From Macrostomum lignano (lineage: Eukaryota), in NCBI GenBank assembly GCA_002269645.1, contig NIVC01000240.1, positions 505,517 to 569,516 of the forward strand: DNA of 64,000 nucleotides, read 5' to 3'. The notes under the pieces were generated by a model that worked only from the letters and a program-made list of their open reading frames with translations, made no database searches and had not been told where the DNA came from. A program made the position numbers and the translations under genes. Below, one piece after another: positions 1-64,000 of this stretch; positions within the stretch are counted from its first letter, which is position 1; each line of letters begins with the position of its first letter.

Positions 1-513
1 CATTCTCGCCTCTCATTGGCTGGCGCCCCCAGGAATTCGTAATATCCAATAAGCACCGATATGTACGCGCCCCGCAGGCGCCCCGATATGTACTTATTGA
101 TTTTGTATTCATCGATACGTACGAGTAGTTATTAACAATTAACAAAAAGTAGGCTAGTGAAAACTACTTATAGTAGTCTAAATTGCGTATATTTTCACAT
201 ATTGACGCATATTAAACATAAATATGAGCAGCAAAATAAGCAGCGCGGGCGCCGAGCGCCAATATCGATATGCGTATCCGGTTCCTGGGGGGCACCAGCC
301 AATGGGAGGCGAGGAGGTTTGACACCCACCTCACCTCCAAAATCATGCCAAACGGAAGTCCTTAGTAGTTATGTGCTCAACAGTCAGCGGAATGGGCAGC
401 ATTGCCGTCAGCGCTGGTTGTGGGACGATGTCGCCGAAGGCATAGCGACAGGATTCCCGCAGCCCCTCCATGCCAATAATATTTGTTTTATCCAACCCAT
501 CGCACCTGTACAG

Positions 514-11468: not shown

Positions 11469-12776
11469 CGAGGGATACTCCAAAAGTTTTGCAATTCAAC
11501 CACTTGCGCAAGTCGCACAATCTTCAAAACCAACTCTCTGTACAATAAACATGTACATAGTCACCACCTCAATTTTCAAGTTAATTCATACATATACGCC
11601 TGCTCAGCCCCCAGTCAAAGTCAGAGACTCCTTAACTGTACAGCTGCAGCCATGGAATTGAATCGTGAGCAGAATCGGCTACTAATTTGGTACTGCCACA
11701 AGCGAAAGCTCACGGCGCTTGAGACTCATGCCGAGCTACTGGCAACATTGGAGGCTCAAGCGCCGTCATATGCTACGGTTACACGCTGGTACCGCGAGTT
11801 CCAGGCCGGCAGGACCAGCTTTTCTGACGACCCCCGGCCCGGGAGACCTCCGACAGCAGTGACGGAGGAAAACATCGTTGCAGTGCAGGAGCTGATTCAT
11901 CAGGATCCGCGAATCACCACGGACATGCTAGCTATGAATGTCGGCATTGGATCGGCAGCGGTCGATACGATTCTACACGATCACCTGAGAGTCAGGAAGC
12001 TTTGTGCCCGATGGATACCCCACATCCTGACAGATGCTCAAAAACAGGCCCGCATGGAGTTCTGTCAGTTTCTCATCGATCGATATGAGCACGGGAGCCA
12101 TCAGCGCCGCTCTGAGGTCATCACTGGTGATGAGACGTTTCTGTATCATTTTGACGTCGAGACAAAGCGCAGCAGTGCAGAGTGGGTGCCGGAAGGTGGT
12201 CAACGACCCCTGAAAGCAAGGCGGTCCCGGTCCCAGGGCAAGCGGATGTTTGCCATCTTCTTCGACTCACAAGGCGTGGTGGCGATGGTGAAGCTGGAGG
12301 GTCAAGCTACAGTCACTGCTCGATGGTACACTGAAGAGTGCTTGCCAGTCGTGATCGACAGCGTGACCCAGAGGGCGCCAAGGACGGGAATGCGAGGGCG
12401 GAAGCTTCACCATGACAACGCCCCCGCCCACACGGCTGCTGCAACTCGAGCGTTCCTGGACCAAGAGGGCATTTCAACGCTACCACACCCGGCCTACTCA
12501 CCAGACCTCGCCCCCTGCGACTTCTGGCTCTTTCCAGAAATCAAAAAGTCGCTTAGGGGGCGCAGGTTTCAGTCCGACGAGGAGCTGGAGCAGGCGGCGA
12601 AGGAGGCGATTGACGGCATCCCAATTGAAGACTTCCAGGGCTTGATGAACAAGTGGCTCGGACGAGCGCACAAGTGTTTGCAGTTCCGGGGAGCCTACTT
12701 TGAAGGATTGTAATAGAAAAGTTTGGCAAAATTAACTTTAAATAGTCGAATTGCAAAACTTTTAGAGTATCCCTCG
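11469..12776 (+). mobile_element. Full-length mariner DNA transposon (1308 bp), probably irritans/Hsmar2-like
   Basis: TA|CGAGGGATACTCCAAAAGTTTTGCAATTC at the left and GAATTGCAAAACTTTAGAGTATCCCTCG|TA at the right: ~30-bp imperfect TIRs with TA TSDs at 11467-68 and 12777-78. Confidence 0.95.
11652..12713 (+). CDS. Mariner transposase, 353 aa, DD34D
   Basis: N-terminal HTH region; WIPHIL (WVPHEL motif); ITGDET; HHDNAPAH; YSPDLAPCD; 34 residues between the 2nd and 3rd Asp; uninterrupted ORF. Confidence 0.96.
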   Translation: MELNREQNRLLIWYCHKRKLTALETHAELLATLEAQAPSYATVTRWYREFQAGRTSFSDDPRPGRPPTAVTEENIVAVQELIHQDPRITTDMLAMNVGIGSAAVDTILHDHLRVRKLCARWIPHILTDAQKQARMEFCQFLIDRYEHGSHQRRSEVITGDETFLYHFDVETKRSSAEWVPEGGQRPLKARRSRSQGKRMFAIFFDSQGVVAMVKLEGQATVTARWYTEECLPVVIDSVTQRAPRTGMRGRKLHHDNAPAHTAAATRAFLDQEGISTLPHPAYSPDLAPCDFWLFPEIKKSLRGRRFQSDEELEQAAKEAIDGIPIEDFQGLMNKWLGRAHKCLQFRGAYFEGL

Positions 12777-16169: not shown

Positions 16170-19100
16170 TTAAATTTGAGCCTGCAATAGGTTAGATTTT
16201 GATCTGATGCGATAAAAGCTCCAACTGATAAGCTGTAGGCAGCCAATCACAGCGGGCAGGTAGCAGGCCAGCATGAGCATCATGTTCGATAGAGCTTGCG
16301 GACAAGTCAGCCCGCCGGCGTCAGCTGAACCAAAGGAGTTAGACGCGGCTGACCTATAGGTTTGATAGCCGCGCATGTTTAACAATTGCACCACAACCAG
16401 TGGCGCCAGACTAATAGCCGGCTTTGTGACTAAAGCGTTCAATCCGAATACTGTCGACGAGAGCGGCAGGCGGCGCGAATTGACAAGTCGATCGCGATCG
16501 ACCAGCTCGCTTAGGGGCAGGTCGAACAGGCTGAACGCGGCCGAGTTCAAGCTGCAGCAAGCGACAGAGTAGACTGCGAACATTGTGCGCGACAAGGCCA
16601 GAACTCCGGTGAGGTGGAGCAGCGGGCCGGCCGCCACTTTGAACACCAGACTGAGCAGCACAGCCCGATGGTGGCCGAACCGCCGGATTAGCGGGAGTCC
16701 GCCGACGACGGCCAGCTAAATGAAGAGATTTATATGAGCTGCGGATTAATATGTGATTACTCTGCTGGCCCAGCAGCTGAGGATCTGGGGTGATGGCCTA
16801 GCAACTGAGGAGGCTGGCCCAGCAACTGAGGATCTGGGGTGATGGCCTAGCAACTGAGGAGGCTGGCACAGCAACTGAGGATCTGAGAGGCTGGCTCAGC
16901 AACTGAGGATCTGGGAGGCTGGCCCAGCAACTGAGGCTCTGGGAGGCTGGCCCAGCAACTGAGGATCTGGGAGGCTGGCTCAGCAACTGAGGATCTGGGA
17001 GGCTGGCCCAGCAACTGAGGATCTGGGAGGCTGGCCCAGCAACTGAGGATTTGGGAGGCTGGCTCAGCAACTGAGGATCTGGGAGGCTGGCCCAGCAACT
17101 GAGGATCTGGGAGGCTGGCCCACAGATACTAGAATAACTAGATAAGCCACTCAGCACATTTGCGTGTAAGCTACTTTCAGTTCAGAAGTAAGTTAAACCG
17201 AAGCATTTTAATGTATTTTCAAAGCCAAAGCTCATTTATTGGCTCTCTCCCCCCTTAGCTTAAACCCTCCAACCGCACCTTTCCACACTACCCCCCGCCC
17301 CGCCACCCATTTTTTATTGCCTTCCTCGGAATTCCAGCCTAAAGCTGCCATGTACATTTCAGTGGATTGGCTAATGTACATTATTGCTGAACCAATTAGC
17401 AAGCTGTTAGCGCCTGCAAGCTTGGGCTTCTAAACTTATCAGTCATTTCAGCTGCCTTTATTTTTTAAAATAGCTTATGTATTCTTCTTTGCTACTGAAC
17501 TGAAAATAGAAAGCTGTTTTACTATGTATTTATGCCTGAGTGGCCTATCTAGTTATTCTAGTATCTGTGGGCTGGCCCAGCAACTGAGGATCTGGGAGGC
17601 TGGCCCAGCAACCGAGGATCTGGGAGGCTGGCTCAGCAACTGAGGATCTGGGAGGCTGGCCCAGCAACTGAGGATCTGGGAGGCTGGCCCAACAACTGAG
17701 AATCTGGGAGGTTGGCCCAGCAACTGAGGATCTGGGAGGCTGGCCCAACAACTGAGAATCTGGGAGGTTGGCCCAGCAACTGAGGATCTGGGAGGCTGGC
17801 TCAGCAACTGAGGATCTGGGAGGCTTGTCCAGCAACTGAGGATCTGGGAGGCTGGCCCAGCAACTGAGGATCTGGGAGGCTGGCTCAGCAACTGAGGATC
17901 TGGGAGGCTTGTCCAGCAACTGAGGATCTGGGAGGCTGGCCCAGCAACTGAGGATCTGGGAGGCTGGCCCGGCAACTGAGGATCTGGGAGGCTGGCCCAA
18001 CAACTGAGAATCTGGGAGGCTGGCCCGGCAACTGAGGATCTGGGAGGCTGGCCCAACAACTGAGAATCTGGGAGGTTGGCCCAGCAACTGAGGATCTGGG
18101 AGGCTGGCTCAGCAACTGAGGATCTGGGAGGTTGACCAACAGCTGAGGATCTGGGAGGCTGGCCCAGCAACTGAGGATCTGGGAGGCTGGCTCAGCAACT
18201 GAGAATCTGGGAGGGCGGGGCCCAATGACGTTGAGCCGCAGCGAAACTCACAGCCGGGAGCAGAGAGATCAGCAGGTAGGCTCCGCTTCGCTGCAACGGG
18301 CTGGCCGGGCCCAGCGGCTCCATGAATATTGACAGGAAATTCGCCCACATGCTGGCCTCAAATATCTGCAGAAAATTGGTGACCACAAATGCTAAAAAGT
18401 CGCGCTGTAGCACAATCTGACGCAGTTGAACAGACAGGCTGGCGTCGGCGGTTGATTGACAAGCGGCATCGGCCTCGACGCAGCCAGACTCCGTTCGGTG
18501 ACTGTCCTGATCAAGCTGCGCCTGCTGCTTGTCGTAAACCGATGAGGAATAGCGACCGCCAATGTAGACAAACACAGTTGCCAAGACAGCAAGGACCAAA
18601 CAGCCAAGCTGGAAGCTACGGAAATCGGCCAGATTGTGCGAGATTAAATTTAGAAAGGCTACGGACCAGGACACGGTCAAGCTGCCCATCACCTGGGTAG
18701 GGTAAGGAGACAATTTGCGGAGTTATAAAAATAGCACAAACGAATTCACCTGCTTGCGCTTACCCATCTAACTACACGATACCACTTCATCACCAATCCA
18801 TTACGCACCCACCTCACTCCACTCCCTGCCCCGCTTTATCGCGCATCCACTTCACTCCACTCCCTACCCCACTTAATAGTGCACCCACCTCACTCCACTC
18901 CCTGCCCCGCTCAATCGCGCATCCACCTAACTCCACTCCTTGCCCCGCTCAATCGCGCACCCACCTCACTCCACTCCCTGCCCCGCTCAATCGCGCACCC
19001 AACTCACGCCACTGCCTGCCCCGCTCAGCCAATCGCTGCACCCCACCTCGCTCCACTCCCTGCCCAGCTCAATCGCGCACCCACCTCACTCCACTCCCTG

Positions 19101-34074: not shown

Positions 34075-37000
34075 GGGCCGCTGTACACTCGCTGCACCTG
34101 AGAGTCTACTGCACCTTGCGCAGTACTGCGAGTCCCAGAACGCTGAGCTGTGCTTAGGGGGCGACCTCAACGCACACCATAAGCACTGGGGCAGCAAAGA
34201 CACCAATACTAGAGGGGAGGAGCTTCTGGCCCTTATCTCTAATACAAATCTTATGCTCTGCAACCGCGGTAGCACTCCTACCTTTAACAATGGCAGATGA
34301 ACTGAGGTCCTCGATACCACACTCGTTACCCCAAGACTCTGACAGAGTTGAGGAGTGGAGAGTCTGGTCTGAGGTGCCCTCCCTGTCTGACCACTGCTTT
34401 ATCGCCTTTAACATCGCGGACACTAAACACCAGTCCTCGATCACTTGGAGGCGTAACATCCGCAACACTGATTGGGCAGCCTATAAGGCTACCCTTGATC
34501 TGCACCTGCAGGAACTCTTGGACTTACGTTCGATTGAGACCTGCGAGGATGTGGACCATGCGGCTGAGACGCTGACAGGTTGCATTATTGCAGCCTATGA
34601 AGCGGCCCGCCCTGTCCGTGCCTACAAAGGCAAGACCTCGGCGCCGTAGTGGAACCCGGAGCTGGGGAAACTCAGGCGGAAGGCCAAAAGCCTTCAGCGC
34701 CGTGCCATGAAGACCGGAAACCCGGAGGACATGGAGCTTTTCCGACAAGCCTCCCGCAACTTCAAATCTGAAGTGCGCAAGGCCAAGGAATGTAAATGGC
34801 GCCAATTCTGCAATGAGTTGGATCAAGACAGACCTACTTCTAGGCTTGTCAAGGCCCTTACAATGGACAAAATGTCCAAATTAGCCATGATCAGAAAAGA
34901 TGATGGCTCTCTTACTAAAGACCCTGAAGAAGTGCTTCAGCATATGCTCAACACATTCTTCCCGAGGGTACCCACTGCTAGATCGGAACCCTACCATTCG
35001 ATGGATGGAGCCATCCTAGCGGCGGGCATTATCACTGAAGATTTAATCGCTCATGCGGTCAGAACCTTCAAGCCCTTCAAATCTCCTGGACCTGATGGTA
35101 TCTACCCTGTTCTTCTTCGTGAAGCAGCCAAGATACCCTCGTTCTTGAGACTTACCCGCAATCTCATGCGGGCCTCTATCCAGCTGGGATACGTTCCCAA
35201 GTGCTGGACCGAAGCTCGAGTAGTCTTCATTCCCAAACCTGGGAAGGGTGACTACCAGAGCGTCAAGGCCTTTAGGCCAATTAGCTTAACGTCAGCAATG
35301 CTTAAGCTCACTGAGAGGCTTATTCTCTGGCGGCTGCTTTCTTGCGAGCTGACAGCAATGCCCCTCAGCAATAATCAGCACGCCTTCTGTACCGGGAGGT
35401 CGACTGACAGCGCCCTGCATGCGATAGTCGAGAAGATTGAACGGGCGGTACTGGGTGACGGTTACGCCCTGGCTCTTTTTCTCGACATTGTTGGCGCCTT
35501 CGACAACGTTATCTTTGAAGCGTTTCAGAGGGCCCTTCAAAACCGCAAAGCTCACGCTACCCTCATACGGTGGATCATGTACATGATCTCTAACCGTACG
35601 GTCACTGCCCAACTTCTTGGGCAAACTGCCTCCGCCAGAGTCTGTAAGGGTGGACCCCAAGGGGGAGTCCTCACCCCGACGCTCTGGAACCTGGTCATGG
35701 ACGCTCTTCTGGGCGACTCCCGACCTGATCCCGTCTTCAAAGTCGGGTATGCTGACGACACGTCACGGCCATTGTGGCAGGGCCATCCCCCAGCACGCTC
35801 AGGGATCTGATGCAGAGCTTTATCCGCAAAGCAGAATCCTAGGCCAATGACAACCGTCTGGAACTCCCTGAGCCCAAAACTGTTGCCATTATGTTCACCA
35901 GCAGAATACGCTGGAACATACGACCTCTGCAGTTTTACGGCAGAGATATTGCTTTCGCGCACCAGACCAGATGTCTCAGGGTCATACTTGACCACCGGCT
36001 CAACTGGTCCTTTCACGTGAAAGCAAAAGCCAAGCGTGCCTCAGCCATCCTGGCCCAGCTCCGACGAGCACTTGGCACTTCTTGGGGTCTATCCCCAAAG
36101 CGGCTTTGGTGGATCTACACTTCCGTAGTTAGACCTGCCATTACGTACGCCTCGGTTGTCTGGGTTAGCGCTACCCAGGTCAAAAGCTATGCAGATTTGC
36201 TCAACACGATCCAGGGCAGAGCGTGTAGGCTTATCTGCAACGCCACCAGGTCCACACCCTTTGCCGGCATGGGGGCCTTCCTTAATCTACCGCCTCTCGA
36301 CCTCTTCGTCAGGGGTGAGGCGGCTAGAACGACGCGGCGTTTACTTGACGCCGGTGTCAAATTCCTTTACATGAGGGCACCTGCTAAGCGGAACCTTGTC
36401 CCGCATAGCGACCTGTGCCTCAACATTCTCAACGAATGTCAGGCCAATCGCGTCTTCACCGATGGCATTGCCTCAACGCTCAACCTGAGACAACGCTACT
36501 CCGTAGCTATCGACTCGCGCGATACCATCAATGACCACTGGAACCCTGGTGAGCTTCATTGCTACACCGACGGTTCTAAGCAGTCAGCCAACACCGGTTT
36601 TGGTGTTGGAATCTTCCTGAACGGGAGGGTCATCGCAACCCACGCTCAGTACACTAGGGTCAACTCCAGTGTCTTCCAAAATGAAGTTCTCGCCATCAGC
36701 TTCTCGCCACTGGCGTAACCGGCAAGAATATCATTTTCCATTCGGACAGCCAAGCTGCCTTGCACGCCATCAGTGGCTGTAGTACCAATTCTGCTACAGT
36801 CCTCGACTGTATCAAACTCCTCAACATGTTGGGCTCCACCAACAAAATCACCCTTAAGTGGGTTCTGGGGCATATGGGGATCCGAGGAAATTAATTGGCT
36901 GACGCCCTTGCAAAAGTTGGTGCCTCCGGCTCCTCTCTCGGTCCCAAACCCTTTGTCCCGATTCCTGTCATCGACTCGCGCATCAAAGCGTGGATTAGGA

Positions 37001-44530: not shown

Positions 44531-52679
<8,149 letters not shown>

Positions 52680-54769: not shown

Positions 54770-55042
54770 ATATACAGTTGAACTTGGGGGCAGAGTAGTT
54801 CTGTGTTAGCCGCGTCTGACTCCCGTGCGCGGCCACATTCTATTGGGGCTTGTCGTGCGATTCGCACCCACGAAGGTCAGCCCCAAGGCACAGAGAGTGT
54901 GCATGCCTGATGATTAGACAGTCAAGGACCGCTGTACACCCTGTGTGAGCGTGTGTGCCTGCGTACATTACGCGTTCAGGAGTCAGCGGAATGGACAAAG
55001 AAAGAAATACTACATGTTCAAAACACGCTTGACTATAGTACA

Positions 55043-56265
55043 TGTAGTTTAGGACCTAGTACTTAGGACCTAGTTTAGTCACTATAGGTAATTTTTAGCA
55101 GTAGGTATACCAAGCCATTTTTCCGCCCGTCGAACTACCAAAATGGGGGAAACCCCTGACCATTTTTTGCTGCGCCGGAACGGAGCAACGCAGGCACACG
55201 AAATTCAAGAACATGATGTGTTCCTTATTACCAGTCCTCAGCTGTAATCAAGGAACAATCACTTCTAGCTCTGTAGCTAGGCAACCCAGTAATCAAATGA
55301 AGGTATGTATTACCTTGAGTCCTGTCTCTGAGAGCTCTTCCGTGTTCTGTTATTCTCGGACTTCCTTTGAACCTCGAACTTCGTTAGACGTCTATGTTCG
55401 TAACCAGGTCCGCGTTCCTTTACGTCCACTGAAGTCGTTTCCGGCCGGTATCTGTAGTGCGGACCAATGGGAAGCTTCCAAATCAACAATGGGTACCCTG
55501 CGCCAATCTGCGGTTTAATATAAGCCTACTCCTTCTAGCAGTGCCTCCATGCACTCTAGGTATAGCTCCGGAAACCACTGATAGTCTTCTAAGATCTATC
55601 AGGGGCAGTCCTTCTGGAGACTGCAACCAGCAGAGTCTAAACAGACTCAGGAGTCTCAACAGACTCAAATAAACTCAAGTCTCAATAGACTTGAGCGAGA
55701 CGTCTCAACCAACAGGCGCAAATGAGTAAGGCTTACCGCAAGAACTCGTCCACGACGCGAGTTTCTTCAGGAAGGCTTCGCTAGAGCTTCCTCTTCGGAG
55801 CTTCTCTCTCTTGGAGATTTCTTGGCTCCGGGTCCGTTCCGGACCACTTGTATTTATAGGCGTTCAGACCTCTCTCGAGGTCGTACATCACTGTCTTCGC
55901 AAATGTCAAAGGGTCACGATTCGGTGGCTGTCAAGCATGACAGGGTAGAAAGTTGCGCAACTAGTCTACTGTAAAAGCGCATGATTGGTTACCGTAGCTG
56001 GTAGACTTTGATTGGTTCATCCGGGTGCAACCCGAGTGCAAACCAAATGATGACTTGAAGGTGGGGTTTGAATTGACAGTTGTTGGTCGCACGTGATTGG
56101 GTGATTTCTAAAATTAGCATGCTCGAGATTTCTCTCTTTCTATTGGTTAATTCGAATATATGTATGGTTCAGCGCATATCCTTATACATGCTCCTCAAAT
56201 TACTACTATTTAAGTAGTACGTTAACAATTTTAAATAACTTTTCTGGGAGATATAATACTCTACA
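55043..56265 (-). repeat. 3' LTR (~1.2 kb); right boundary firm, left boundary tentative
   Basis: On the - strand it begins TGTAG at 56265, 3 nt after the PPT. A CTACA end fits at 55043; alternatives are ~55272 and ~55453. It contains CCAAT boxes, a TATA box and ATTAAA. Confidence 0.7.
55851..56150 (-). promoter_or_regulatory. U3 promoter of the LTR: TATA box (CCTATAAATA, 55860-55851) plus four CCAAT boxes
   Basis: Plus-strand ATTGG near 55984, 56011, 56096 and 56143, upstream (on -) of TATAAATA. Confidence 0.7.
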
Positions 56266-56268
56266 AAA

Positions 56269-56280
56269 TCTCCCTTTTTT
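56269..56280 (-). other. Polypurine tract AAAAAAGGGAGA
   Basis: Purine run immediately 5' (on -) of the LTR TG. Confidence 0.85.
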
Positions 56281-56476
56281 ACGAAAAAACTCGTCCCGAG
56301 TTTGAATAAAAATATAAATTTACAGAAACGTCTTGAACTTGATATTGTATATATTTATATTGCCGGTATGTTACATTGTATACATTATCAGTAGTTAGTT
56401 TTGTCAGAGTTAATGGAAAGTTATCGTCTGATAAATGCAGATGACACTTGCCCCTGTGTTGATGCCGCTCGGACGA

Positions 56477-57115
56477 TCAGCCGAACCCGATTTTGAGCAC
56501 GGCGGATATCTGCTGCGCTGTTCGCGCAGCCAGACATGCCACCGCCCAGAATGTCGGCTGAAAGCGTGTGAAGCGCGGTTCCTCTGTGCGCTCGAGTATC
56601 ATCAGGTAGGCGTCAATACTCGTGAGTCCTGGGTGCTCGCGAGCCAGGCTCCTGGAAATTCCAAGGACGTGACGCCATGACTCCTGATGCCGGTGCGGCC
56701 ACGGCCACGACCGGACGGCGATGGACAATTGCTCGAAGGTCAAGCTGTCCGGCTCCGCCAACGTCAACTCTGGCACTGGTGTTATTGTCGCCAACATCAG
56801 CGCCGTCGAATGGTTGACAGGAGCTAGACATTCGGTGCAGATCTCTATATCTCTTGCACCGTACCTTCGGAGACAGCTTGCACAGACCCAATGTCGGTTG
56901 GAACACACCTGAACATGGGGCTGTTCGCCGCATACCACACAGGTAGCCCGCGCGCGACGGCAGACCGGGCAGGTAGATAGCATGGTAACATTGCCATCCA
57001 CCTGCTGCGCCATGGCGTCGCAGGAGACACACACGCGGTGTCCCCACTCACACGTCGGGATCATATAGTCCCGCGTCTCGAGACAGCAGGGGCATACGTC
57101 GTTGTTCTCGGCCAT
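56477..57115 (-). CDS. Accessory ORF B, 212 aa: two tandem RING-HC-like domains plus a helical C-terminal domain
   Basis: C-x2-C-x10-C-x3-H-x2-C-x2-C-x16-C-x2-C (CPVCR) and C-x2-C-x8-C-x3-H-x2-C-x2-C-x11-C-x2-C; intact ORF; CAG|ATG start. Confidence 0.85.
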   Translation of the reverse strand: MAENNDVCPCCLETRDYMIPTCEWGHRVCVSCDAMAQQVDGNVTMLSTCPVCRRARATCVVCGEQPHVQVCSNRHWVCASCLRRYGARDIEICTECLAPVNHSTALMLATITPVPELTLAEPDSLTFEQLSIAVRSWPWPHRHQESWRHVLGISRSLAREHPGLTSIDAYLMILERTEEPRFTRFQPTFWAVACLAARTAQQISAVLKIGFG

Positions 57116-57169
57116 CTGCGGGTTTTATGTAATCATCGTAATTAAAGCAGTCAGGGTGAAGTATACAGT

Positions 57170-57838
57170 CTACTGTGTATACCGTAAAAGCCATATGAAA
57201 TAACTACGTGACAAAATTAGTCTTTTTAGCGCGTGGCAATATATGTGCAATGTCCAGTGAAACGCGTGATGGGCATGCAAAAATTGTCGTAGATGTCGTT
57301 CTATATCCAGGGGTAACATATGACGCAATATTCCTTGATTGTTATGTGCGTACAGTAGTAATTCATTGCGTGACCGTCGAGCGAAACGAGGTACTGGCCA
57401 AAACTCTAGCAACTGTTCGATACGTATTGCGGGTAGTGTTCGAATATTATCAACATGTAAGCATCGATTGGCGTCGGGCTTGATGCGACACCACTTCTTG
57501 AAGGTGCTGTCCTTCGGCATACTGTTACACATAGGGCATCCTATGATGCCCCTACTAGCGGTTCGTTTCAAGCATTGCATGCAAATAAAATGACTTTGAT
57601 TACAGTATTGAAAGGTGCGCCACGAATAACAATAGGCGCACTGCGTCAGACTACTCCTACATAGGGGGCAGCTTTGCCAGTGTTGGATATGATGCGCGTC
57701 ACACAAGCAAGTGCCGCATATGCGATGATTATTTATACAAATGGTTGGTGGTTTTTTATGCAGGTCATCTTCCAAACAGACAGGGCATTCATAGAGTTGC
57801 CGTGGCTGGGTCGCCAGTCTAGACTGTGCATTGCCCAT
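57170..57838 (-). CDS. Accessory ORF A, 222 aa from MGNAQS: putative myristoylated double-RING protein
   Basis: First ATG in strong context (ACTATGG). C-x2-C-x12-C-x3-H-x2-C-x2-C-x12-C-x2-C (CPLCR) and C-x2-C-x8-C-x3-H-x2-C-x2-C-x11-C-x2-C. The ORF track extends it to a GTG at 57889. Confidence 0.85.
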   Translation of the reverse strand: MGNAQSRLATQPRQLYECPVCLEDDLHKKPPTICINNHRICGTCLCDAHHIQHWQSCPLCRSSLTQCAYCYSWRTFQYCNQSHFICMQCLKRTASRGIIGCPMCNSMPKDSTFKKWCRIKPDANRCLHVDNIRTLPAIRIEQLLEFWPVPRFARRSRNELLLYAHNNQGILRHMLPLDIERHLRQFLHAHHAFHWTLHIYCHALKRLILSRSYFIWLLRYTQ

Positions 57839-57984
57839 AGTCGTTAGCCAAGCGTCAGTTGCGGTTATGTAGTCAATTGTAGAGTTCACTTGTGGAGTCG
57901 CTCGGATTAGTCGCCTCTTACGACAAGCTTGCGAAGCTGTAGAGCTATTCTGACCCGGTCTCTACACGGGTTTGTTTTCGCAAC

Positions 57985-60900
57985 TTAACGAGGTCGCAGA
58001 TTATAGCCGTGCGGCTGGCTCTCGTTCGTTGTTTGAGTCTCCTCGTGCTTCGTTGCGATGTGGCGGTTTGTCGAACGCGTGCGGTCGGCATTGTCAAGTG
58101 ACGGTAGAAATGTCGCCGTGTCAGTGTTGATCCTTTTCAATCGATGAATGTGCACGTAGAATTGGTGCTGATGAGGATCTTGCACATTGGCCAGGCGTGC
58201 CGTTGTCGGTAACGTTAGTTGGACCACTCGATATGGTCCTTTGTACTTCTGTGCGTGTTTGTGCGTCTGTTGTGGCGGATAGTGCAGGTAGACGATGTCG
58301 CCGGCTGTCAGAGTTGTCGATCTCGTGTCGGTGCCGGTGGTCAGAGCCACCTGATTGTCGATGTTGTGCTTGGCTACTTTCCATGCGAGGTGTAGTTGCG
58401 TGACGAACTTTTGAATGGACGTCGGGACTTCCACATATTGCGATGGTAGTAGTTGCTGTGCCAATAGGTTTGGCGGCTGGAAGTCTCGCCCAAACATTAG
58501 AAAGAATGGCGTATTATCCGTTGATCGATGAATAGCGCTGTTGTAGGCCATTGTTACTGCTTGCAGATAGATGATCCAGTCGTCCGGTTGTTGATGCGCG
58601 AAGTGTGTAATCATCTCGTGTAGGTTGCGGTGAAACCTTTCAACCATGTTCGCCTTCGGATTGTAGGTCGATGTGTAGATCTGCGTGATGTTGAGGATCT
58701 TCACCACTTGCTGAAAGAGTTGAGACGTAAACTGCGATCCATTGTCCGATGTGAGGTTCTTTGGCGTACCGTACTTGCAGATGATGTCGTTGAAGAAACC
58801 CATTGCCACTGTCTGAGCTGTGATGTCCGGTATTGGTATGGCAATAGCAAACTTTGAGAAAATGTCCAAGGCTGTTAGGATGTAGGTGTAGGCTATGCCA
58901 TGGAGACAGCTCGGTGGCAGCGGTCCGGTGATGTCGATGCTGAGACAGTCCATAGTCGTTGACTTCGGTATCGATTGTAGCTGTGGTTTTTGTCGTCGTC
59001 CTGTCTTTGATGCTGCGCATGAGTGGCAGTTATTGCAATACTGCTTGATGTCGCCATGCATGCTTGGCCAAAAGTAGTATTGCTCCACTCTTGCAATGGT
59101 TTTGGCTGCCGACAGGTGTCCAGCGAGTGGGTTGTCGTGCAGCTCGTTGAGAATGGCCTGCCTAAACGAATATGGCATGTAGATTTTAGGTTTGTTGTCA
59201 CTCATCCAGTAGAGTCGTGTCTTGTTGATTGTTAAATGTTGTCGCTGCTTGCGCAGGAATTTTCGTTCCACGGGGCTGAGCTTGATGTCCTTGTCGTTGT
59301 TTTTAACTGCTATGTAGAAGTTGTCGTGTTCAGTCTCATCCACCAATTCCTTGATGTTAGGGATTGGATGAATGGCGTTGACTTCGTAGGTTCTTGACAG
59401 AGCGTCCGCCGCCTTGTTAGTAATTCCTGGTTTGTAGACGAGCTTGTAGTTGTAGTCCTGGATCTTGAGTGTCATCCTGATGAGTCGGTTGTTTGTTTGT
59501 CCTTTTGTAGTTACGACGTAGGTCAGCGGTGCGTGATCTGTGCGTACTATCGTCGGTATTGGAGAACCATAGATGTAGTAATGGAACTGTCGTAGGGCGA
59601 ACAAGACTCCTAGTAGTTCTCGTTCCGTAGCGGACCATTTTGTCTCATTCGGTTTAAGTGCTCGACTGACGTAGGCTATAGGTCGTTCCTTTTTGTCTCC
59701 AGTTTCCTGTAGTAGGACTGCTCCGAGTCCCGTTCCTGAGGCGTCTGTCTCGATGATGAAGGGTTTGTCGAAGTCCGGATGCTGTAGCAGTGCGTCTGAT
59801 GTCAGTTGTCGTTTGATTTCGTCAAAACTTTCTTGTTGCTTTTGTGTCCAATTATCCTGCTTCCATTTGTCGAACTTGAGCAGGTCGTACAGCGGCTTTG
59901 CTGTCTTCGCGAAGTTGGGTAAGAACTTTCGGAAGTATTGCGCTAGTCCAAGAAATGATTGGACCTTCGTTATGCTAGTTGGTGTAGGAAACTTCTTTAC
60001 TTTCTCCACATTGTCTGGGTCCGGTGAGATTCCTTTGGCTGTCACTTGGTGTCCTAGGTAACGTACGTTGTCTCGGAAGAATTTGCATTTCGTCGGTTGT
60101 AGCTTAAGACCTTGGCGTTGAATGAGCGCTAGGGCCTTCTCCGTAGCTTCATAGAGTCGTTGGAAGTCTTCTCCGTAGGCCAAGATGTCGTCGACATAGT
60201 GCAGCAGGTTTGTGCATCCTGCAAGCATGTATGCCGTTAGTCGGCTCATTGTTGCTGGGCTGTTGCTGAGTCCCATTGGCGACCGGTTGTACTCGTAGAC
60301 TTGTCCATTGTAGGTTTTGAAAGCCGTGTACTGTCGTGATTCTTTCTCGATTTCAATTTGCCAAAATCCATGACGTAGGTCGAACACCGTGAACAATTTT
60401 GCTGTGTTGAGCTTTGCTAGTAGCTCGGAGATCTTTGGTAGGCTTTGCTGATCCGTCGGTATGTACTTGTTCAGCAGTCTGAAGTCGCATACAAGTCGTC
60501 TTTCGTTAGTCTCCTTCTTTTGTACCAGTAGGCACGGTGAGGAATAGGCTGAAATTGCTTTGCTGATGATGCCGTGCTTTAGCATTTTATCGATAATTTC
60601 ATCAAAGTGTTGTTGCAGATGTTTGGCAATCGGGTACGGCTTGCATTGAATTGGTTCCGTGTGCGGTAGAAGCTTGATTTCTTGTTTAATGTCTTTAGCG
60701 CGTCCGATGTCGTAATCATGATGGCAGAAGGCTTCGTTGTACTTCCACAACAGTTGTCGAACTTTCTTCTTTTGCTGTTCCGTGATCGGGCTGTCGTCCA
60801 AGTTGATTTTCTTTTGAAATTCTTCTTCTGTTAGTCGTGGAGTCGTGTGCTCAATCAGCATAACTGATGCTTGAGTGTTGAGATGACCGATGCACATTCC

Positions 60901-62907
60901 TTGTCGTAGATGAACCATTTCCGCGTTCGGGTTGAAGATTTGTACTGGCAGCTGCTTATCTTTTGCAACCAGCACTAGTGCCGTAGGCATCATAATTTGG
61001 TGTTTAGCCGTGACTCTTCTGTTTGGGTCGAATATCATTGCTTCCTCCGTTGCGTTAGTTGCCTTTGCCTTTATCCAGCAGGCGCTCTCCGGTTGGATGA
61101 TGACATCTTGTTGCAATGTTACTTTTGGTAGTACTCGGATCTGGTTGATCAATGGTTGTTCTACCGAGTCGATCTTGAACGTTTGCTTATTGAAGTCGAA
61201 GGTCAATGGTAGTCGAAGCTGCTTGAACGTGTCGATGCCAACAATAACGTCCTGGTTTGGGAGTCTGTCGATGACGTACGTTGGAACTGTCAAATGTTTA
61301 TTAGCGATTCTTAAATCAATGTCGGCTTTTCCCAGAATGTTTAGCGAATGTCCTCCTGCTCCTGCAACTGCGATTGTTGCTGGCCGTAGAGCAAGTCGTA
61401 GCTTGTTGCACAGTTGTTTTGATATAACTGTAATGGAGCTGCCGGAGTCCAGTAACGCTCGACATGGTAGATTGTTGATTATAACTTGAGCCATTGCTTT
61501 GCCAATTTCGGCGTGTAGAGTACATACGTAGTTTTCTGGCCATTTTGGGTCTTGCTGTTCTGCTTGATAGTTAGGTGGTTGTATTCTTGGTGCCGTTGGT
61601 GTTGTCGGAATCGATGGATATAGCCGCGTTGCTAGTGTCGGTTGCCCTTGAACCTCACGATGTGCAGTTTCTGTTAGTTCTAAACTGTTGTCGCCTTCCG
61701 TTGTCGTTCTTTGCATTATGGCATTCACTGTCTTCTTAGCTCTTGGACAAGTTTGACTGAAGCACCGTACGATTGACGAAATGATGAAGATTGCCGTGGC
61801 AATCCACACAATGCAAGCACCGTAGAAGATGAATCCTTGATAGAGACTGCCTCTTCCATTGAGCAGCTCCCAGAAGCTGTTTGTCCAAAATGATTTGATG
61901 GCGCTGTCCATTGAAACAAGGACGGGAAATCTTCCTGTCCCGGTTCCTTTGTCCTTTCTTGTGAACAGCTGGTGAATCATCTTGCGTTGGGTGATGAACG
62001 CTTGCAAGAAGTCGTTGATCGTCCATCCTGGTGTTATTTCGTCAAGTTGGATATCGGCGAATGGCGTATACTTTGTTCTGTTGAATCGGATTTTCAAATC
62101 CTCCATGTCGTAGTTTTCGTCGACGATTACTTCCGGTTCTGTGATGTTTGCTGTCGTTCCAGTTGTTTTGATGACGTGTAGTGCATTGTCCAGTTGATAG
62201 TAGTTCGCTGCCGTGGTGCAAGGTCTCGGTATTGCGGTGCCAACGATGATGTTGTGTACCGTGTCCAAGAATCCCTGAATTCGTTTTCCTTCGTAGAACG
62301 CTTCAATCCTTGGCTTGTCGTAGCAGGTTGTTGACGTGTTTGACGGCAAGATGTTGAAGTGCTGTATCGGCGTGCACTTGTATATCAACAGATGCTCGTA
62401 TATTGGAACTGCCAAAACGTTCGTCATTCCGGTGATTTTACGAAAAGTCATCGTAGGGTTGACATAGTAGTTTTGTCTGGCATAATTTAAGTTGATTGCG
62501 TGCATTTTGCAAGTTAGCTGGACCAGTGTTCGATGCAAGTGGTTTAACTGGTTGTGTAGATTGTGATCCAAAGCCGTTATCTTTGCTGACAGTAGTCGGT
62601 TTGACACTAGTTTGGGACGTTCGATGTCTCGTCGTCGTCTGTTCTGTTGTTCCTGCTGTTGATACGTTCCGTTGATGATCGCCAGAAAGGTTTGTTTGTC
62701 GTCTTCTTTTACGTAGACTGGTATCTCTTGTTCCGAGATGAATAGTGTCTTGTCTGTATCCTTGCATTTCAGTTTTTGCTCGACTGGTTTCTTTTGAAAC
62801 GTCAGTGCCAAGTCTCCTGACTTTGCCAAAAACGTATTTGACAGTAGACCTCCTTCAACTGTGTGATACTTTTGAAGCTTGCAGTCAATTTCCGGCTCAA
62901 CTTCCAC
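57985..62907 (-). CDS. 1640-aa open frame: C-terminal part of an env-like glycoprotein, TM helix, aspartic protease, RT, RNase H and integrase
   Basis: RRRR furin site (62629-40); NPT...C motif; TM at ~61836-61768; LDSGS (61441-49); YVDD (60187-98); TDASGTGLGAVL; H-x6-H...C-x2-C zinc finger; D-D-E (SIDITG, SDNG, VERFHR); GPY; terminal YNLRPR. Confidence 0.95.
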   Translation of the reverse strand: MEVEPEIDCKLQKYHTVEGGLLSNTFLAKSGDLALTFQKKPVEQKLKCKDTDKTLFISEQEIPVYVKEDDKQTFLAIINGTYQQQEQQNRRRRDIERPKLVSNRLLSAKITALDHNLHNQLNHLHRTLVQLTCKMHAINLNYARQNYYVNPTMTFRKITGMTNVLAVPIYEHLLIYKCTPIQHFNILPSNTSTTCYDKPRIEAFYEGKRIQGFLDTVHNIIVGTAIPRPCTTAANYYQLDNALHVIKTTGTTANITEPEVIVDENYDMEDLKIRFNRTKYTPFADIQLDEITPGWTINDFLQAFITQRKMIHQLFTRKDKGTGTGRFPVLVSMDSAIKSFWTNSFWELLNGRGSLYQGFIFYGACIVWIATAIFIISSIVRCFSQTCPRAKKTVNAIMQRTTTEGDNSLELTETAHREVQGQPTLATRLYPSIPTTPTAPRIQPPNYQAEQQDPKWPENYVCTLHAEIGKAMAQVIINNLPCRALLDSGSSITVISKQLCNKLRLALRPATIAVAGAGGHSLNILGKADIDLRIANKHLTVPTYVIDRLPNQDVIVGIDTFKQLRLPLTFDFNKQTFKIDSVEQPLINQIRVLPKVTLQQDVIIQPESACWIKAKATNATEEAMIFDPNRRVTAKHQIMMPTALVLVAKDKQLPVQIFNPNAEMVHLRQGMCIGHLNTQASVMLIEHTTPRLTEEEFQKKINLDDSPITEQQKKKVRQLLWKYNEAFCHHDYDIGRAKDIKQEIKLLPHTEPIQCKPYPIAKHLQQHFDEIIDKMLKHGIISKAISAYSSPCLLVQKKETNERRLVCDFRLLNKYIPTDQQSLPKISELLAKLNTAKLFTVFDLRHGFWQIEIEKESRQYTAFKTYNGQVYEYNRSPMGLSNSPATMSRLTAYMLAGCTNLLHYVDDILAYGEDFQRLYEATEKALALIQRQGLKLQPTKCKFFRDNVRYLGHQVTAKGISPDPDNVEKVKKFPTPTSITKVQSFLGLAQYFRKFLPNFAKTAKPLYDLLKFDKWKQDNWTQKQQESFDEIKRQLTSDALLQHPDFDKPFIIETDASGTGLGAVLLQETGDKKERPIAYVSRALKPNETKWSATERELLGVLFALRQFHYYIYGSPIPTIVRTDHAPLTYVVTTKGQTNNRLIRMTLKIQDYNYKLVYKPGITNKAADALSRTYEVNAIHPIPNIKELVDETEHDNFYIAVKNNDKDIKLSPVERKFLRKQRQHLTINKTRLYWMSDNKPKIYMPYSFRQAILNELHDNPLAGHLSAAKTIARVEQYYFWPSMHGDIKQYCNNCHSCAASKTGRRQKPQLQSIPKSTTMDCLSIDITGPLPPSCLHGIAYTYILTALDIFSKFAIAIPIPDITAQTVAMGFFNDIICKYGTPKNLTSDNGSQFTSQLFQQVVKILNITQIYTSTYNPKANMVERFHRNLHEMITHFAHQQPDDWIIYLQAVTMAYNSAIHRSTDNTPFFLMFGRDFQPPNLLAQQLLPSQYVEVPTSIQKFVTQLHLAWKVAKHNIDNQVALTTGTDTRSTTLTAGDIVYLHYPPQQTHKHAQKYKGPYRVVQLTLPTTARLANVQDPHQHQFYVHIHRLKRINTDTATFLPSLDNADRTRSTNRHIATKHEETQTTNESQPHGYNLRPR

Positions 62908-63745
62908 GCGAAGAAGTATTGTCGTGACTTAGATGGTTCTTCATATCGTGAGTCGCCTCTGCGTATAATTTGCCATCGATAGTCTTGATGATATGTTGGA
63001 CTCAACGGTAAGCTGTATAGTTCCTCATTCCGCAGTATCGGCGTTGGACACCATCCTTTGCTGTATCGGCAGTCGCTTAATTGCAGTTGTAGCGACTCCA
63101 TTTTTTCAAAAGGATTGTGGTAGAATGGAATATTCCTGATTAGGTAACTGTTTCGTGTCATGTAGTTAGTCCATGCTTCCGAAAAGTGTACATATCGTCC
63201 GTTTGCTGAGTTCTTCGTTCGGTAAAGTTGTGCCTCCCCCACTTTCTCATCCGGTTCTAGCTGACCATCCTTTGAGAACAGTGTTTGGTTCCATTGTAGA
63301 CATTCAGCGTGCGACACATGTAGTTCGTGTTGCCAAAATCGAATTCTGTTCCACTGTCCTCGCCAAACTTTTTCCACTAGGTGCTTGTCTCTGAAGCACA
63401 CTATTCCGTGTTGTCGATGCTTTTGATGTTAGCCTTGTAGAGGTCGAGTGTAATCTTCTTTGGCTTCGTTTGGTTTGTCTTGAAGTAGCTGCATTTGATG
63501 TCGGTTGGTATCTTGTAGATCATCGGTTGGATATGCGCATCCGTTGGACATATCATTGGTTTCTCCATTGCTGTTGCTTTGGTGACTACTGCCGTCAGTA
63601 GTATTATGATGATCCAGAATATCCAGAATCGCCATTTTCTGAACGTTGCCGTTGTCTTTGCTGGCATTGGCTGCGGCTGCCATTCGTTATCTTCTGCGTC
63701 CGCATCGTATTCTTCCTCTTGTTCCATTGGCGTTTCCGAGCGCAA
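62908..63745 (-). pseudogene. N-terminal half of the env-like glycoprotein (signal sequence and Cys-rich ectodomain), broken by frameshifts
   Basis: FRKWRFWIFWIIIILLTAVVTKATA|MEKPMICP signal-like stretch, ICP...KC, VCF and CRYSKGWCP; frame changes at ~63401 and ~63030-62910. Confidence 0.75.
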
Positions 63746-64000
63746 GGCATCCGATTCGTTCCGCTGCTTGTCGTCTTCATCATTTTCTTCCTTGCTTTCT
63801 TCGATGTTGTAGTTGTGTCACTCCATTGTCGCGGTACCTCACTTCGGCCTTGTAGTCGACGTTTGAATGTAGGCTTCACCATTTCGTTTATATCGGATCT
63901 CGTAGCATTGATCGCTGTCGGAGCTTAGATTTCTTTCTTCCATTCCTTTGTGCCTTCCGTCTTCATGTGCTTTGTCGACGCTTGGTTGTCATCAGCGTCT

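What the first reader, a model, noticed from the sequence alone, without database searches (positions are those of the whole stretch)
55043..64000. Gypsy element organised like a complex retrovirus: [env-PR-RT-RH-IN] - RING-A - RING-B - PPT - LTR
Seen in sequence: a Ty3/Gypsy pol, an env-like membrane glycoprotein, and two intact extra ORFs between integrase and the PPT, all co-oriented inside the LTR boundary. Established: most Metaviridae are gag-pol, and env-bearing ones usually place env after pol. Inference: this may be a potentially infectious invertebrate endogenous retrovirus lineage with accessory genes, a combination I do not recognise as described.
Basis: partly seen in the sequence, partly recalled or inferred. 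Interest (0 to 1): 0.93.

Follow-up and report, generated by a model that had tools for sequence, protein, structure and literature searches.

The report
Flatworm endogenous retrovirus with RING-finger genes
This is the 3' part of a damaged copy of a retrovirus-like Ty3/gypsy element of the flatworm Macrostomum lignano: its gag-env-pol gene order is already published, but the RING-finger (ubiquitin-ligase-like) genes it carries after pol appear to be undescribed.

Summary
On the minus strand the window carries env fused in frame to PR-RT-RH-IN, then two ORFs that each hold two C3HC4 RING fingers, then a polypurine tract and a 3' LTR. The LTR ends at 55214, not 55043.

The host is Macrostomum lignano (96-98% protein identity to deposited polyproteins). 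Env before pol is not new: GAG-ENV-POL elements with gB-type env are published for Platyhelminthes, Nematoda and Bryozoa (eLife 2026).

This copy is defective. Env has two frameshifts and the gag tail is degraded; pol has no breaks.

In relatives, gag, env and pol form one ORF of up to 2447 codons with exactly two membrane spans. The env tail carries PTAP and PPNY late-domain motifs.

RING-A belongs to the lineage:
- It follows pol in all six other M. lignano copies, truncated or decayed there.
- It also follows pol in a relative with 64% integrase identity.
- All 16 zinc ligands are kept, and dN/dS is about 0.06-0.08.

RING-B is absent from all six other copies and is compositionally foreign (GC3 0.69 against about 0.5). 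It is 60-65% identical to a RING-B-like M. lignano protein.

No paper searched describes RING genes in LTR elements. Verdict: a new variant of a known kind, of moderate to high interest.

The parts
63628..64000 (-). 3' end of gag, partial: it runs off the window. It is diverged (about 80% nt identity to L001) and not continuously readable against either reference copy.
   Evidence: tblastn of L001 gag and of the L006 polyprotein. The DNA alignment shows several frameshifting indels and in-frame stops in the alternative frame. The gag of relatives has a CCHC knuckle.
61495..63727 (-). env, from start codon to the end of the cytoplasmic tail. It has a signal-anchor TM1 (63566-63622), an ectodomain, a furin-like RRRR (62629-62640), TM2 (61780-61836) and a tail with PTAP and PPNY (61567-61599). 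It is broken by 2 frameshifts and has 0 in-frame stops. Its 3' part is in frame with pol.
57985..61494 (-). pol: PR 61204-61494, RT 60043-60522, RNase H 59452-59850, IN zinc-binding domain plus core 58657-59175, GPY motif 58225-58242, stop codon at 57985-57987. No frameshifts or stops relative to L001.
   Evidence: Pfam; comparison with L001; coordinates.
57170..57838 (-). RING-A, 222 aa. It starts MGNAQS (an N-myristoylation-type motif), followed by RING1 (57659-57787), RING2 (57527-57640) and a helical tail with a WP motif. It starts 146 nt after the pol stop.
56477..57115 (-). RING-B, 212 aa, a paralogue of RING-A. RING1 is at 56960-57094 and RING2 at 56828-56941. It starts 54 nt after the RING-A stop. 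GC is 0.595 and GC3 is 0.685.
56321..57360 (-). Segment with no counterpart in the six other M. lignano copies. It holds the C-terminal third of RING-A and all of RING-B.
   Evidence: blastn and tblastn against L001-L006.
56269..56280 (-). Polypurine tract (AAAAAAGGGAGA), 3 nt before the LTR.
   Evidence: The flanking ~70 nt are 88-90% identical to the PPT region of L002-L006.
55214..56265 (-). 3' LTR, 1052 nt, TGTAG...ACATCA, with TATAAA at 55858.
   Evidence: Homology to the LTR pairs of L001-L006 ends at 55214 in every copy. Termini are and motifs.

Best explanation
Window 55214-64000 (minus strand) is the 3' 8.8 kb of a defective, recombinant copy of a Macrostomum lignano endogenous retrovirus-like Ty3/gypsy (Metaviridae) element of the GAG-ENV-POL type.

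Shown:
- In related copies gag, env and PR-RT-RH-IN are one reading frame, up to 2447 codons.
- That frame has exactly two membrane spans.
- The stretch between TM2 and protease carries PTAP and PPNY late-domain motifs.
- A conserved extra gene, RING-A, follows pol.

Inferred:
- TM1 acts as an internal signal-anchor and TM2 as a stop-transfer. Gag and Pol then stay in the cytosol while the ~577-residue glycoprotein ectodomain is in the lumen.
- The junctions are cut by signal peptidase, a furin-like protease (RRRR) and the element's own protease.
- Pol is brought to budding sites as a membrane-tethered Env-Pol precursor.

RING-A encodes a double C3HC4 RING protein that keeps the E2-contact residues of active RING ligases. 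Most likely (inferred) it is an element-encoded E3 ubiquitin ligase made from a subgenomic message. It would either ubiquitinate the element's own Gag or Env tail to help ESCRT-dependent budding, or mark a host restriction or silencing factor for degradation, as ICP0-type viral RING proteins do.

RING-B is a second paralogue present only in this copy among seven. Its host-like base composition and its 60-65% identity to a RING-B-like M. lignano protein suggest it arrived by recombination or capture, not as a fixed part of the family.
For: Identity:
- 96-98% protein identity to M. lignano polyproteins ALD16272.1 and PAA64473.1.
- Pfam gives PR-RT-RH-IN.
- LTR pair, PBS-like TGG, PPT and gag CCHC are present in L001.

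Single ORF and topology:
- L006 has an ORF of 2447 aa, L002 has gag+env in 1266 aa, and L003 has 1625 aa.
- P0035/L011, from another sample, has gag and env in frame at 52% identity.
- Two TM spans, 12 Cys, 6 sequons and RRRR; PTAP and PPNY.
- Published GAG-ENV-POL elements with a gB-type env flanked by two TM domains in Platyhelminthes.

RING-A:
- It lies after pol in L001-L006 and in L007, where IN is 64% and RING 41% identical.
- The 16 ligand positions are invariant.
- dN/dS is 0.06-0.08.
- It aligns to the BRCA1 RING, with CPVCL against CPICL and CPLCR against CPLCK.
- The AF2 model has pLDDT 70-92 over residues 15-130.
- Its Foldseek hits are overwhelmingly RING E3 ligases.

RING-B:
- Absent from six copies.
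- GC3 0.685 against 0.45-0.54 in the element and 0.74 in a neighbouring host exon-like ORF.
- 60-65% identity to A0A1I8G201.

Mosaic origin: the RING-A region and U3 are 70-76% identical to other copies, while env-pol is 85-99% identical. dS is above 2 in RING-A and 0.53 in pol.
Against: - No expression, splicing or protein data could be examined.
- Pfam RING hits are all below gathering thresholds, and Foldseek E-values are no better than 0.007.
- The env class was not established here. The Pfam hit is below threshold (23 bits against 27), the AF2 model failed (pLDDT 33), and sequence searches of PDB found nothing.
- In the six other copies RING-A is truncated, carries a stop or a lost ligand, or is largely deleted. 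A full-length RING-A may therefore be dispensable for at least some amplification.
- The MGNAxS start is not kept in the distant homologue P0016.
- Only seven M. lignano copies from one assembly could be fetched.
- The frameshifts in env could be assembly errors.
Confidence: 0.7

Rival explanations
1. The RING ORFs, RING-B above all, are passengers. They would be host or foreign gene fragments picked up by template switching, with no role in the element's life cycle.
For: - RING-B is in one copy of seven.
- Its GC and GC3 are host-like.
- A RING-B-like protein is annotated in M. lignano (A0A1I8G201).
- RING-B-like ORFs in other samples sit on ~1 kb contigs with no pol next to them.
- Other copies carry only truncated RING-A.
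Against: - RING-A keeps its place after pol across 64% IN divergence.
- It keeps all 16 ligands and shows dN/dS of 0.06-0.08.
- The family has no close cellular homologue among 1.84 billion representatives. Only about 6 true relatives were found.
Confidence: 0.2
2. RING-A is a matrix-like budding factor, not an enzyme. It would be a myristoylated small RING protein that bridges the Gag, Env tail and membrane, in the manner of arenavirus Z.
For: - The MGNAQS / MGNALS start is kept in all M. lignano versions, even in the L001 remnant.
- The element buds with an envelope protein and has late-domain motifs.
- Gag itself starts MA..., not MG.
Against: - The G2 motif is absent in P0016, P0017 and the B-type proteins.
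- RING-A and RING-B contain no PTAP, PPxY or YPxL motif.
- There are two RINGs, not one.
- Gag is already tethered to the membrane through TM1 in the polyprotein.
Confidence: 0.12
3. The RING ORFs are zinc-finger RNA-binding regulators of the element's own RNA, controlling export or splicing. That is the role of CERV in Cer1 or Rev in complex retroviruses.
For: [quoted passage not shown] CERV also has an essential Cys-rich loop.
- A Platyhelminthes gB-type element is reported as sister to Cer1.
Against: - CERV's described domains (H, M and a G-protein-like G domain) are not RING fingers. Its Cys loop is described as a possible C4 finger, whereas RING-A is a double C3HC4 RING.
- The fold matches are to E3 ligase RINGs with E2-contact residues kept.
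- If gag-env-pol is one ORF on the unspliced RNA, the need for an export factor is still plausible but untested.
Confidence: 0.08
4. The RING-B segment is an assembly chimera or a nested insertion of an unrelated repeat, not part of the element.
For: - It is unique to this copy and compositionally distinct.
- The window comes from a very repeat-rich genome.
Against: - RING-B is a paralogue of the adjacent RING-A in the same orientation.
- The segment also carries the ancestral C-terminus of RING-A, with the WP motif shared with P0016, P0020 and P0021. The shorter copies are therefore the deleted forms.
- The segment is followed by the conserved PPT region.
- No terminal repeats were detected around the segment.
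Confidence: 0.08

Closest known systems
GAG-ENV-POL 'errantivirus-like' Ty3/gypsy elements with HSV gB-type Env of Platyhelminthes, Nematoda and Bryozoa (Chary & Hayashi, eLife 2026, PMC13524379; nematode elements of Sacco et al. 2022, cited there)
   Same: - Ty3/gypsy pol, with env between gag and pol.
- Ectodomain flanked by two membrane spans, with an optional furin site.
- Flatworm host.
- Multiple near-intact copies with near-identical LTRs (L001: 99.6%).
   Different: - No RING or other accessory ORF is mentioned in that paper (0 occurrences of 'RING' and 'accessory').
- Its text does not mention in-frame fusion of gag-env-pol into one ORF.
- The paper does not name Macrostomum in its main text.
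- The gB fold of this env could not be confirmed here.
Cer1 of Caenorhabditis elegans and its CERV protein (PMC10309623)
   Same: [quoted passage not shown] Its product has a Cys-rich zinc-finger-like loop and serves the element's own cycle. Cer1 is reported as sister to a flatworm gB-type element.
   Different: CERV's described domains (H, M, G) are not RING fingers, it is made from a spliced mRNA that includes upstream sequence, and Cer1 has no env.
Viral RING proteins: herpesvirus ICP0, arenavirus Z, and RING proteins of poxviruses, iridoviruses, baculoviruses and giant viruses
   Same: A virus-encoded C3HC4 RING. ICP0 and many giant-virus RING proteins are among the Foldseek BFVD hits. A Z-like N-terminal myristoylation-type motif is present in RING-A.
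   Different: - None of these is encoded by a retroelement.
- RING-A and RING-B have two adjacent RINGs plus a private C-terminal domain.
- Sequence similarity is limited to the RING signature.
Complex retroviruses (Retroviridae with accessory genes near the 3' end)
   Same: Extra ORFs between pol/env and the 3' LTR, and a highly variable accessory/U3 region reshuffled by recombination.
   Different: - The element is in Metaviridae, not Retroviridae.
- Env lies upstream of pol.
- Retroviral accessory proteins recruit host E3 ligases and do not themselves carry RING domains (established knowledge).
Bdelloid rotifer LTR retrotransposons with captured ORF3s (Rodriguez et al. 2017, PMC5408684)
   Same: Family-specific extra ORFs after pol that are gained, lost and shared between lineages.
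   Different: The ORF3 types there are env-like, GDSL esterase, DEDDy exonuclease, coiled-coil and TM. There is no RING.

Membership tests
Ty3/gypsy (Metaviridae) LTR retroelement | pol domain order PR-RT-RNase H-IN | tested here: met
   Pfam hits in that order, all above gathering score. A GPY motif lies in the IN C-terminus.
Ty3/gypsy (Metaviridae) LTR retroelement | Two LTRs (TG...CA), a PBS after the 5' LTR, a PPT before the 3' LTR, and a target-site duplication | tested here: inconclusive
   The window holds only the 3' LTR (56265-55214, TG...CA) and the PPT. The full-length relative L001 has 1088-nt LTRs at 99.6% identity, TGG 2 nt after the 5' LTR, and a candidate 4-bp duplication. The 5' end of this copy lies outside the window.
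Ty3/gypsy (Metaviridae) LTR retroelement | gag with a CCHC nucleocapsid knuckle | tested here: met
   Met in relatives (L001 gag zf-CCHC; L006; P0035). Only the degraded gag tail is in the window.
GAG-ENV-POL gB-type errantivirus-like elements (PMC13524379) | env ORF located between gag and pol | tested here: met
GAG-ENV-POL gB-type errantivirus-like elements (PMC13524379) | Env ectodomain has the class III (HSV gB-like) five-domain fold | tested here: inconclusive
   - Only a sub-threshold Pfam hit to PF24664 Monjiviricetes_fusion (E 2e-5, 23.1 bits against a cut-off of 27).
- The AF2 single-sequence model was unusable (pLDDT 33).
- PDB sequence and profile searches were empty.
- Indirect support: RRRR is followed by a polar stretch predicted as a long helix, not by a hydrophobic fusion peptide. 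This fits gB-type and not F-type (inference).
GAG-ENV-POL gB-type errantivirus-like elements (PMC13524379) | Ectodomain flanked by signal peptide+TM or by two TM domains | tested here: met
   Exactly two hydrophobic spans flank a 577-aa ectodomain.
RING-type E3 ubiquitin ligases | Eight zinc ligands with C3HC4 spacing | tested here: met
   There are two such sets per protein. All 16 positions are invariant in 7 homologues.
RING-type E3 ubiquitin ligases | Match to curated RING profiles | tested here: not met
   Sina_RING, zf-RING_2 and zf-C3HC4 hits have E 5e-4 to 1e-2, all below gathering scores. The PDB sequence hit to the BRCA1 RING has E about 1e-3.
RING-type E3 ubiquitin ligases | Cross-brace RING fold | tested here: inconclusive
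   The AF2 model has pLDDT 70-92 over residues 15-130. Foldseek hits are overwhelmingly RING E3s, with probability up to 0.99 and rmsd 2-4 A over ~50 residues. E-values are no better than 0.007, as expected for a small domain.
RING-type E3 ubiquitin ligases | E2-contact hydrophobic residue, Pro, and a basic 'linchpin' after the last Cys | tested here: met
   RING1 has CP[VI]C...CPxCR. P58 and R61 are invariant in 7 sequences. The alignment to BRCA1 CPICL...CPLCK is. The role of these residues is established knowledge and was not tested.
RING-type E3 ubiquitin ligases | Ubiquitin-ligase activity | not testable with these tools
   No biochemical data.
Arenavirus Z-like matrix protein | N-terminal G2 myristoylation, a single RING, and C-terminal late domains | tested here: not met
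   The G2 motif is present only in M. lignano RING-A. There are two RINGs, and RING-A and RING-B have no late-domain motif.
Complex retrovirus (Retroviridae) | Retroviridae-type gene order (gag-pol-env), with accessory genes expressed from spliced mRNAs | tested here: not met
   The gene order is gag-env-pol. Pol carries the RT_RNaseH_2 and Integrase_H2C2 domains usual for Ty3/gypsy elements, but no RT phylogeny was built. Splicing is not testable here.

The most novel reading that the evidence does not exclude
A flatworm lineage of enveloped Ty3/gypsy endogenous retroviruses translates Gag, a class III fusogen and Pol as one polytopic membrane polyprotein and carries its own RING E3 ubiquitin-ligase gene(s). 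These would be the first retroelement-encoded RING ligases. They would be used either to feed ubiquitin-dependent ESCRT budding through the PTAP/PPNY motifs in the Env tail, or to destroy a host restriction or silencing factor. In that reading, accessory-gene 'complexity' arose independently outside Retroviridae.
Probability: 0.35. Interest if true: 0.8.

Novelty: new variant of a known kind. Interest (0 to 1): 0.6.

Why it matters
Retroviruses are known to hijack host ubiquitin ligases through adaptor proteins. A retroelement that brings its own RING ligase would be a different solution, one otherwise seen in large DNA viruses and arenaviruses.

Together with the single gag-env-pol reading frame and the late-domain motifs in the Env tail, it gives a concrete, sequence-defined model of how an invertebrate enveloped retroelement could assemble. 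It would also be a second example, after CERV of Cer1, of a lineage-specific accessory gene in Metaviridae.

Macrostomum lignano is a transgenic, regenerating laboratory flatworm with published transposon expression data. Descriptive follow-up on transcripts, small RNAs and copy census is therefore practical.

If the RING ORFs prove to be passengers, the locus is an ordinary defective copy of a published element type.

Tried and rejected
- A second LTR or other copies inside the window: none found.
- Word-indexed homologue search with RING-A: nothing.
- Exact-sequence look-ups of RING-A, RING-B, the short RING-A forms and the long polyproteins: not on record. Further copies of this exact subfamily could therefore not be fetched.
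- AF2 of the env ectodomain of the intact relative without an alignment: unusable, pLDDT 33. It was not sent to fold search.
- PDB sequence and profile searches with env: empty.
- IMG/VR scan with env: no relative.
- Metagenome scan with the IN C-terminus: one weak, uninformative hit, L013.
- SRA accession look-up in papers, to name the organisms behind the Logan contigs: nothing.
- Supplementary tables of the eLife paper: not held. Sacco et al. 2022: not held.
- tRNA scan of the window: none. Heat-shock elements in the LTR: none.
- Hits P0018, P0019 and P0022 of the representative search are repeat-rich fish-type Ig/SRCR proteins. I discarded them as compositional artefacts.
- P0017/L012 is a RING homologue in an AT-rich contig with no pol link. 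I did not count it as an element gene.
The intact relatives were used as they stand.
- The alignment tool prints a majority-consensus line by default. I made no use of those lines.
Full report
**What is in the window.** The element lies on the minus strand and runs off the window at 64000.

- A 1640-codon open frame ending at 57985 contains Asp-protease, RVT_1, RT_RNaseH_2/RT_RNaseH, Integrase_H2C2 and rve domains in Ty3/gypsy order.
- Its first ~375 residues are not pol. They hold an RRRR site, a 19-residue hydrophobic span, and a weak hit to Pfam PF24664 'viral fusion glycoprotein'.
- Two ORFs follow pol, at 57170-57838 (from its ATG) and 56477-57115. They are paralogues (28% identity, E 4e-13).
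- Then come a polypurine tract (56269-56280) and an LTR that begins TGTAG.
- The window holds no second copy of the LTR.

**Host and relatives.** The long ORF is 96% identical to ALD16272.1, 'retrovirus-related polyprotein' of Macrostomum lignano. It is 97.6% identical, over its open part, to PAA64473.1, a 1914-aa uninterrupted env-pol product. I fetched six genomic copies from assembly GCA_002269645.1 (L001-L006).

L001 is full length. It has 1088-nt LTRs at 99.6% identity, TGG two bases after the 5' LTR, a gag ORF with a CCHC knuckle, and the 1914-codon env-pol ORF. In all six copies homology to the window's LTR stops at 55214. A different dispersed repeat starts right after it.

**State of this copy.** Compared with the L001 ORF, env has two frameshifting indels and no in-frame stop. 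Pol has no break. The ~100 gag codons inside the window are about 80% identical to L001 and cannot be read continuously against either reference arrangement. Most of gag, the PBS and the 5' LTR are outside the window. The frameshifts could be assembly errors; I could not test this.

**Gene order and polyprotein.** Env before pol is published. Chary & Hayashi (eLife 2026, PMC13524379; preprint 2023) report that elements of Nematoda, Bryozoa and Platyhelminthes carry HSV gB-type env in the order GAG-ENV-POL. They note that gB-type ectodomains can be flanked by two TM domains with a furin site that is not always kept.

The relatives add something here: the three genes can be one reading frame.

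- L006 has a single 2447-codon ORF spanning gag, env and nearly all of pol. L002 has gag+env in one 1266-codon ORF, and L003 has 1625 codons.
- A 52%-identical relative from another sample (P0035/L011) also has gag and env in frame.
- The L006 product has exactly two hydrophobic spans. They bracket a 577-residue ectodomain with 12 Cys, 6 sequons and RRRR.
- From this I infer the topology: Gag in the cytosol, TM1 as signal-anchor, the ectodomain in the lumen, TM2, then the tail plus PR-RT-RH-IN in the cytosol.
- The ~100-residue tail between TM2 and protease carries PTAP and PPNY seven residues apart, in the window copy as well (61567-61599). These are classical ESCRT-recruiting late-domain motifs (established knowledge) in an unusual place.
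- The eLife main text does not use 'in-frame', 'single ORF' or 'polyprotein'. Sacco et al. 2022 could not be read, so I cannot say whether the fusion is already described.

**Env class.** I could not confirm the gB fold.

- The Pfam hit is below threshold (23.1 bits against 27).
- AF2 without an alignment failed (pLDDT 33).
- PDB sequence searches, an IMG/VR scan and the homologue search gave no usable depth.
- The polar, helix-prone sequence after RRRR argues against an F-type class I protein and fits gB-type. This is an inference.

**The RING genes.** Each ORF contains two adjacent C3HC4 sets. All 16 ligand positions are invariant across the window's two proteins, the L002/L003 versions and four homologues from other samples.

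- RING1 aligns to the BRCA1 RING (E about 1e-3). It keeps the E2-contact pattern CP[VI]C...CPxCR, and the Pro and the basic residue after the last Cys are invariant.
- An AF2 model from a 7-sequence alignment is confident over residues 15-130.
- That model matches overwhelmingly RING E3 ligases in PDB and BFVD: RING1B-BMI1, TRAF6, RNF125, SIAH1, Not4, TRIMs, PML and ICP0. E-values are weak, 0.007 or worse.
- Pfam RING hits stay below gathering scores.
- RING-A starts MGNAQS (MGNALS in other copies), an N-myristoylation-type motif. Distant homologues do not keep it.

**Is RING-A part of the element?** Yes.

- It follows pol in all six other M. lignano copies.
- On contig L007 from another sample, integrase is 64% and the RING protein 41% identical, with similar spacing: 119 nt against 146 nt.
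- Between the window and L002/L004, dN/dS is 0.06-0.08.
- In those six copies the gene is shorter or decayed. L002-L006 share a premature end just before the conserved WP motif and lack what follows. L004 has lost one ligand, L006 has a stop, and L001 keeps only a degenerate 70-codon remnant.
- The WP motif and C-terminal domain are shared with P0016, RING-B, P0020 and P0021. The window's RING-A is therefore the complete form, and the others are deletion derivatives.

**Is RING-B part of the element?** Only in this copy, as far as I could see.

- About 1.04 kb (56321-57360), holding the end of RING-A and all of RING-B, has no counterpart in L001-L006.
- RING-B has GC 0.595 and GC3 0.685. RING-A, pol and the LTR have GC 0.45-0.48 and GC3 0.42-0.54. 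A neighbouring host exon-like ORF has 0.63 and 0.74.
- RING-B is 60-65% identical to repeated units of UniProt A0A1I8G201, a 660-aa M. lignano 'RING-type domain-containing protein'.
- It is 27-28% identical over its full length to ~210-aa proteins on short Logan contigs that show no pol.

I therefore read RING-B as an old paralogue type that reached this copy by recombination or capture.

The whole 3' region is mosaic. The RING-A region and U3 are 70-76% identical to the other copies, while env-pol is 85-99% identical. dS in RING-A exceeds 2, against 0.53 in pol. A second divergent patch (82-84% identity against 97-99% in the neighbouring tiles) lies in the N-terminal part of env.

**Rarity and prior description.** A full HMMER scan of 1.84 billion representative proteins with the double-RING profile gave 15 hits at E<=1e-3. 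About six of them are true relatives: one M. lignano protein and five Logan ORFs. No cellular RING family came close.

The exact RING sequences tested (window, L002 and L003 versions) are absent from the 15-billion-protein collection. Searches of the paper library for RING genes in LTR elements found nothing. That includes the eLife paper, the rotifer ORF3 paper, the plant additional-ORF review and the M. lignano LTR-retrotransposon paper.

**Mechanism.**
- Shown: the gene order, the single frame in relatives, two TM spans, the late-domain motifs, conservation of and selection on RING-A, and the RING signature and fold.
- Inferred: the polyprotein topology and its processing, expression of the RING genes from subgenomic messages, and E3 ligase activity directed at the element's own budding machinery or at a host factor.
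- Rivals: passenger genes; a Z-like matrix role; a CERV/Rev-like RNA regulator; or an assembly or nested-insertion artefact for RING-B. Each is weighed in its own section.

**Verdict.** The architecture as a whole is a new variant of a published kind. The RING accessory gene, and possibly the one-ORF polyprotein with late domains in the Env tail, are the parts worth a specialist's attention.

Noticed in passing
window 61567-61599 (minus strand); L006 polyprotein residues ~1295-1305: PTAP and PPNY late-domain motifs sit seven residues apart in the cytoplasmic stretch between the env TM2 and the protease. In retroviruses such motifs normally lie in Gag.
   Followed up: partly
L006:4775-12118; L002:1544-5344; L003:4388-9265; L011:182-2932: In related copies gag, env and pol (or gag and env) are one continuous reading frame, up to 2447 codons with exactly two membrane spans. 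In L001, by contrast, gag overlaps the env-pol ORF by 124 nt in another frame.
   Followed up: partly
window ~62800-63400 (minus strand): A patch in the N-terminal part of env is only 82-84% identical to L001, while the neighbouring tiles are 97-99% identical. It may be a recombinant segment or a fast-evolving surface region.
   Followed up: partly
P0015 (UniProt A0A1I8G201, M. lignano, 660 aa): An annotated 'RING-type domain-containing protein' is built of repeated RING-B-like units (60-65% identity to RING-B) joined by a recurring acidic linker. It looks like a gene model read through a tandem array. Its genomic locus could not be fetched.
   Followed up: partly
L008, L009, L010 (Logan SRR31628425, SRR31628392, SRR31628394): RING-B-like ORFs of ~210 aa sit on ~1 kb contigs with 95-160 nt upstream that show no RING-A-like or pol coding. 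These could be subgenomic transcripts or free-standing genes. The source organisms are unknown.
   Followed up: partly
window 55154-55212 and 54881-54966: Immediately outside the LTR lie short matches (80-88%) to unrelated places in locus L004. Another dispersed repeat therefore abuts the element's end.
   Followed up: no
window 50646-52679 (minus strand): A 677-codon open frame has EF-hand and Ras/Roc GTPase domains and high GC3 (0.74). It is probably a host gene exon 2.5 kb from the LTR.
   Followed up: partly
window 11652-12713 (+); inverted repeats 5904-6335 / 17120-17569: A mariner/Tc1-type DDE transposase ORF (HTH_48, DDE_3, Transposase_1) lies between ~430-nt inverted repeats (87-96% complementary) that are 11 kb apart.
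   Followed up: no
window 34707-35810 (+): A separate reverse-transcriptase ORF (RVT_1, E 9e-21) belongs to another retroelement.
   Followed up: no
window 157-1221 (+): An open frame has a MOR2-PAG1_C (Furry-type cell morphogenesis) domain. It is probably a host exon.
   Followed up: no
window 1260-50603, e.g. 45087-47831 and 49021-50603: Tandem repeats are very dense: about 30 minisatellite arrays with periods of 13-124 nt, plus a 2.7-kb (TCTG)n and a 0.5-kb (GTCA)n microsatellite. Many long 'ORFs' listed there are repeat artefacts.
   Followed up: no
L012 (Logan SRR31252246): A 130-aa double-RING homologue (P0017) lies in an AT-rich contig with no pol-like neighbour. The double-RING module may also exist outside these elements.
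   Followed up: partly
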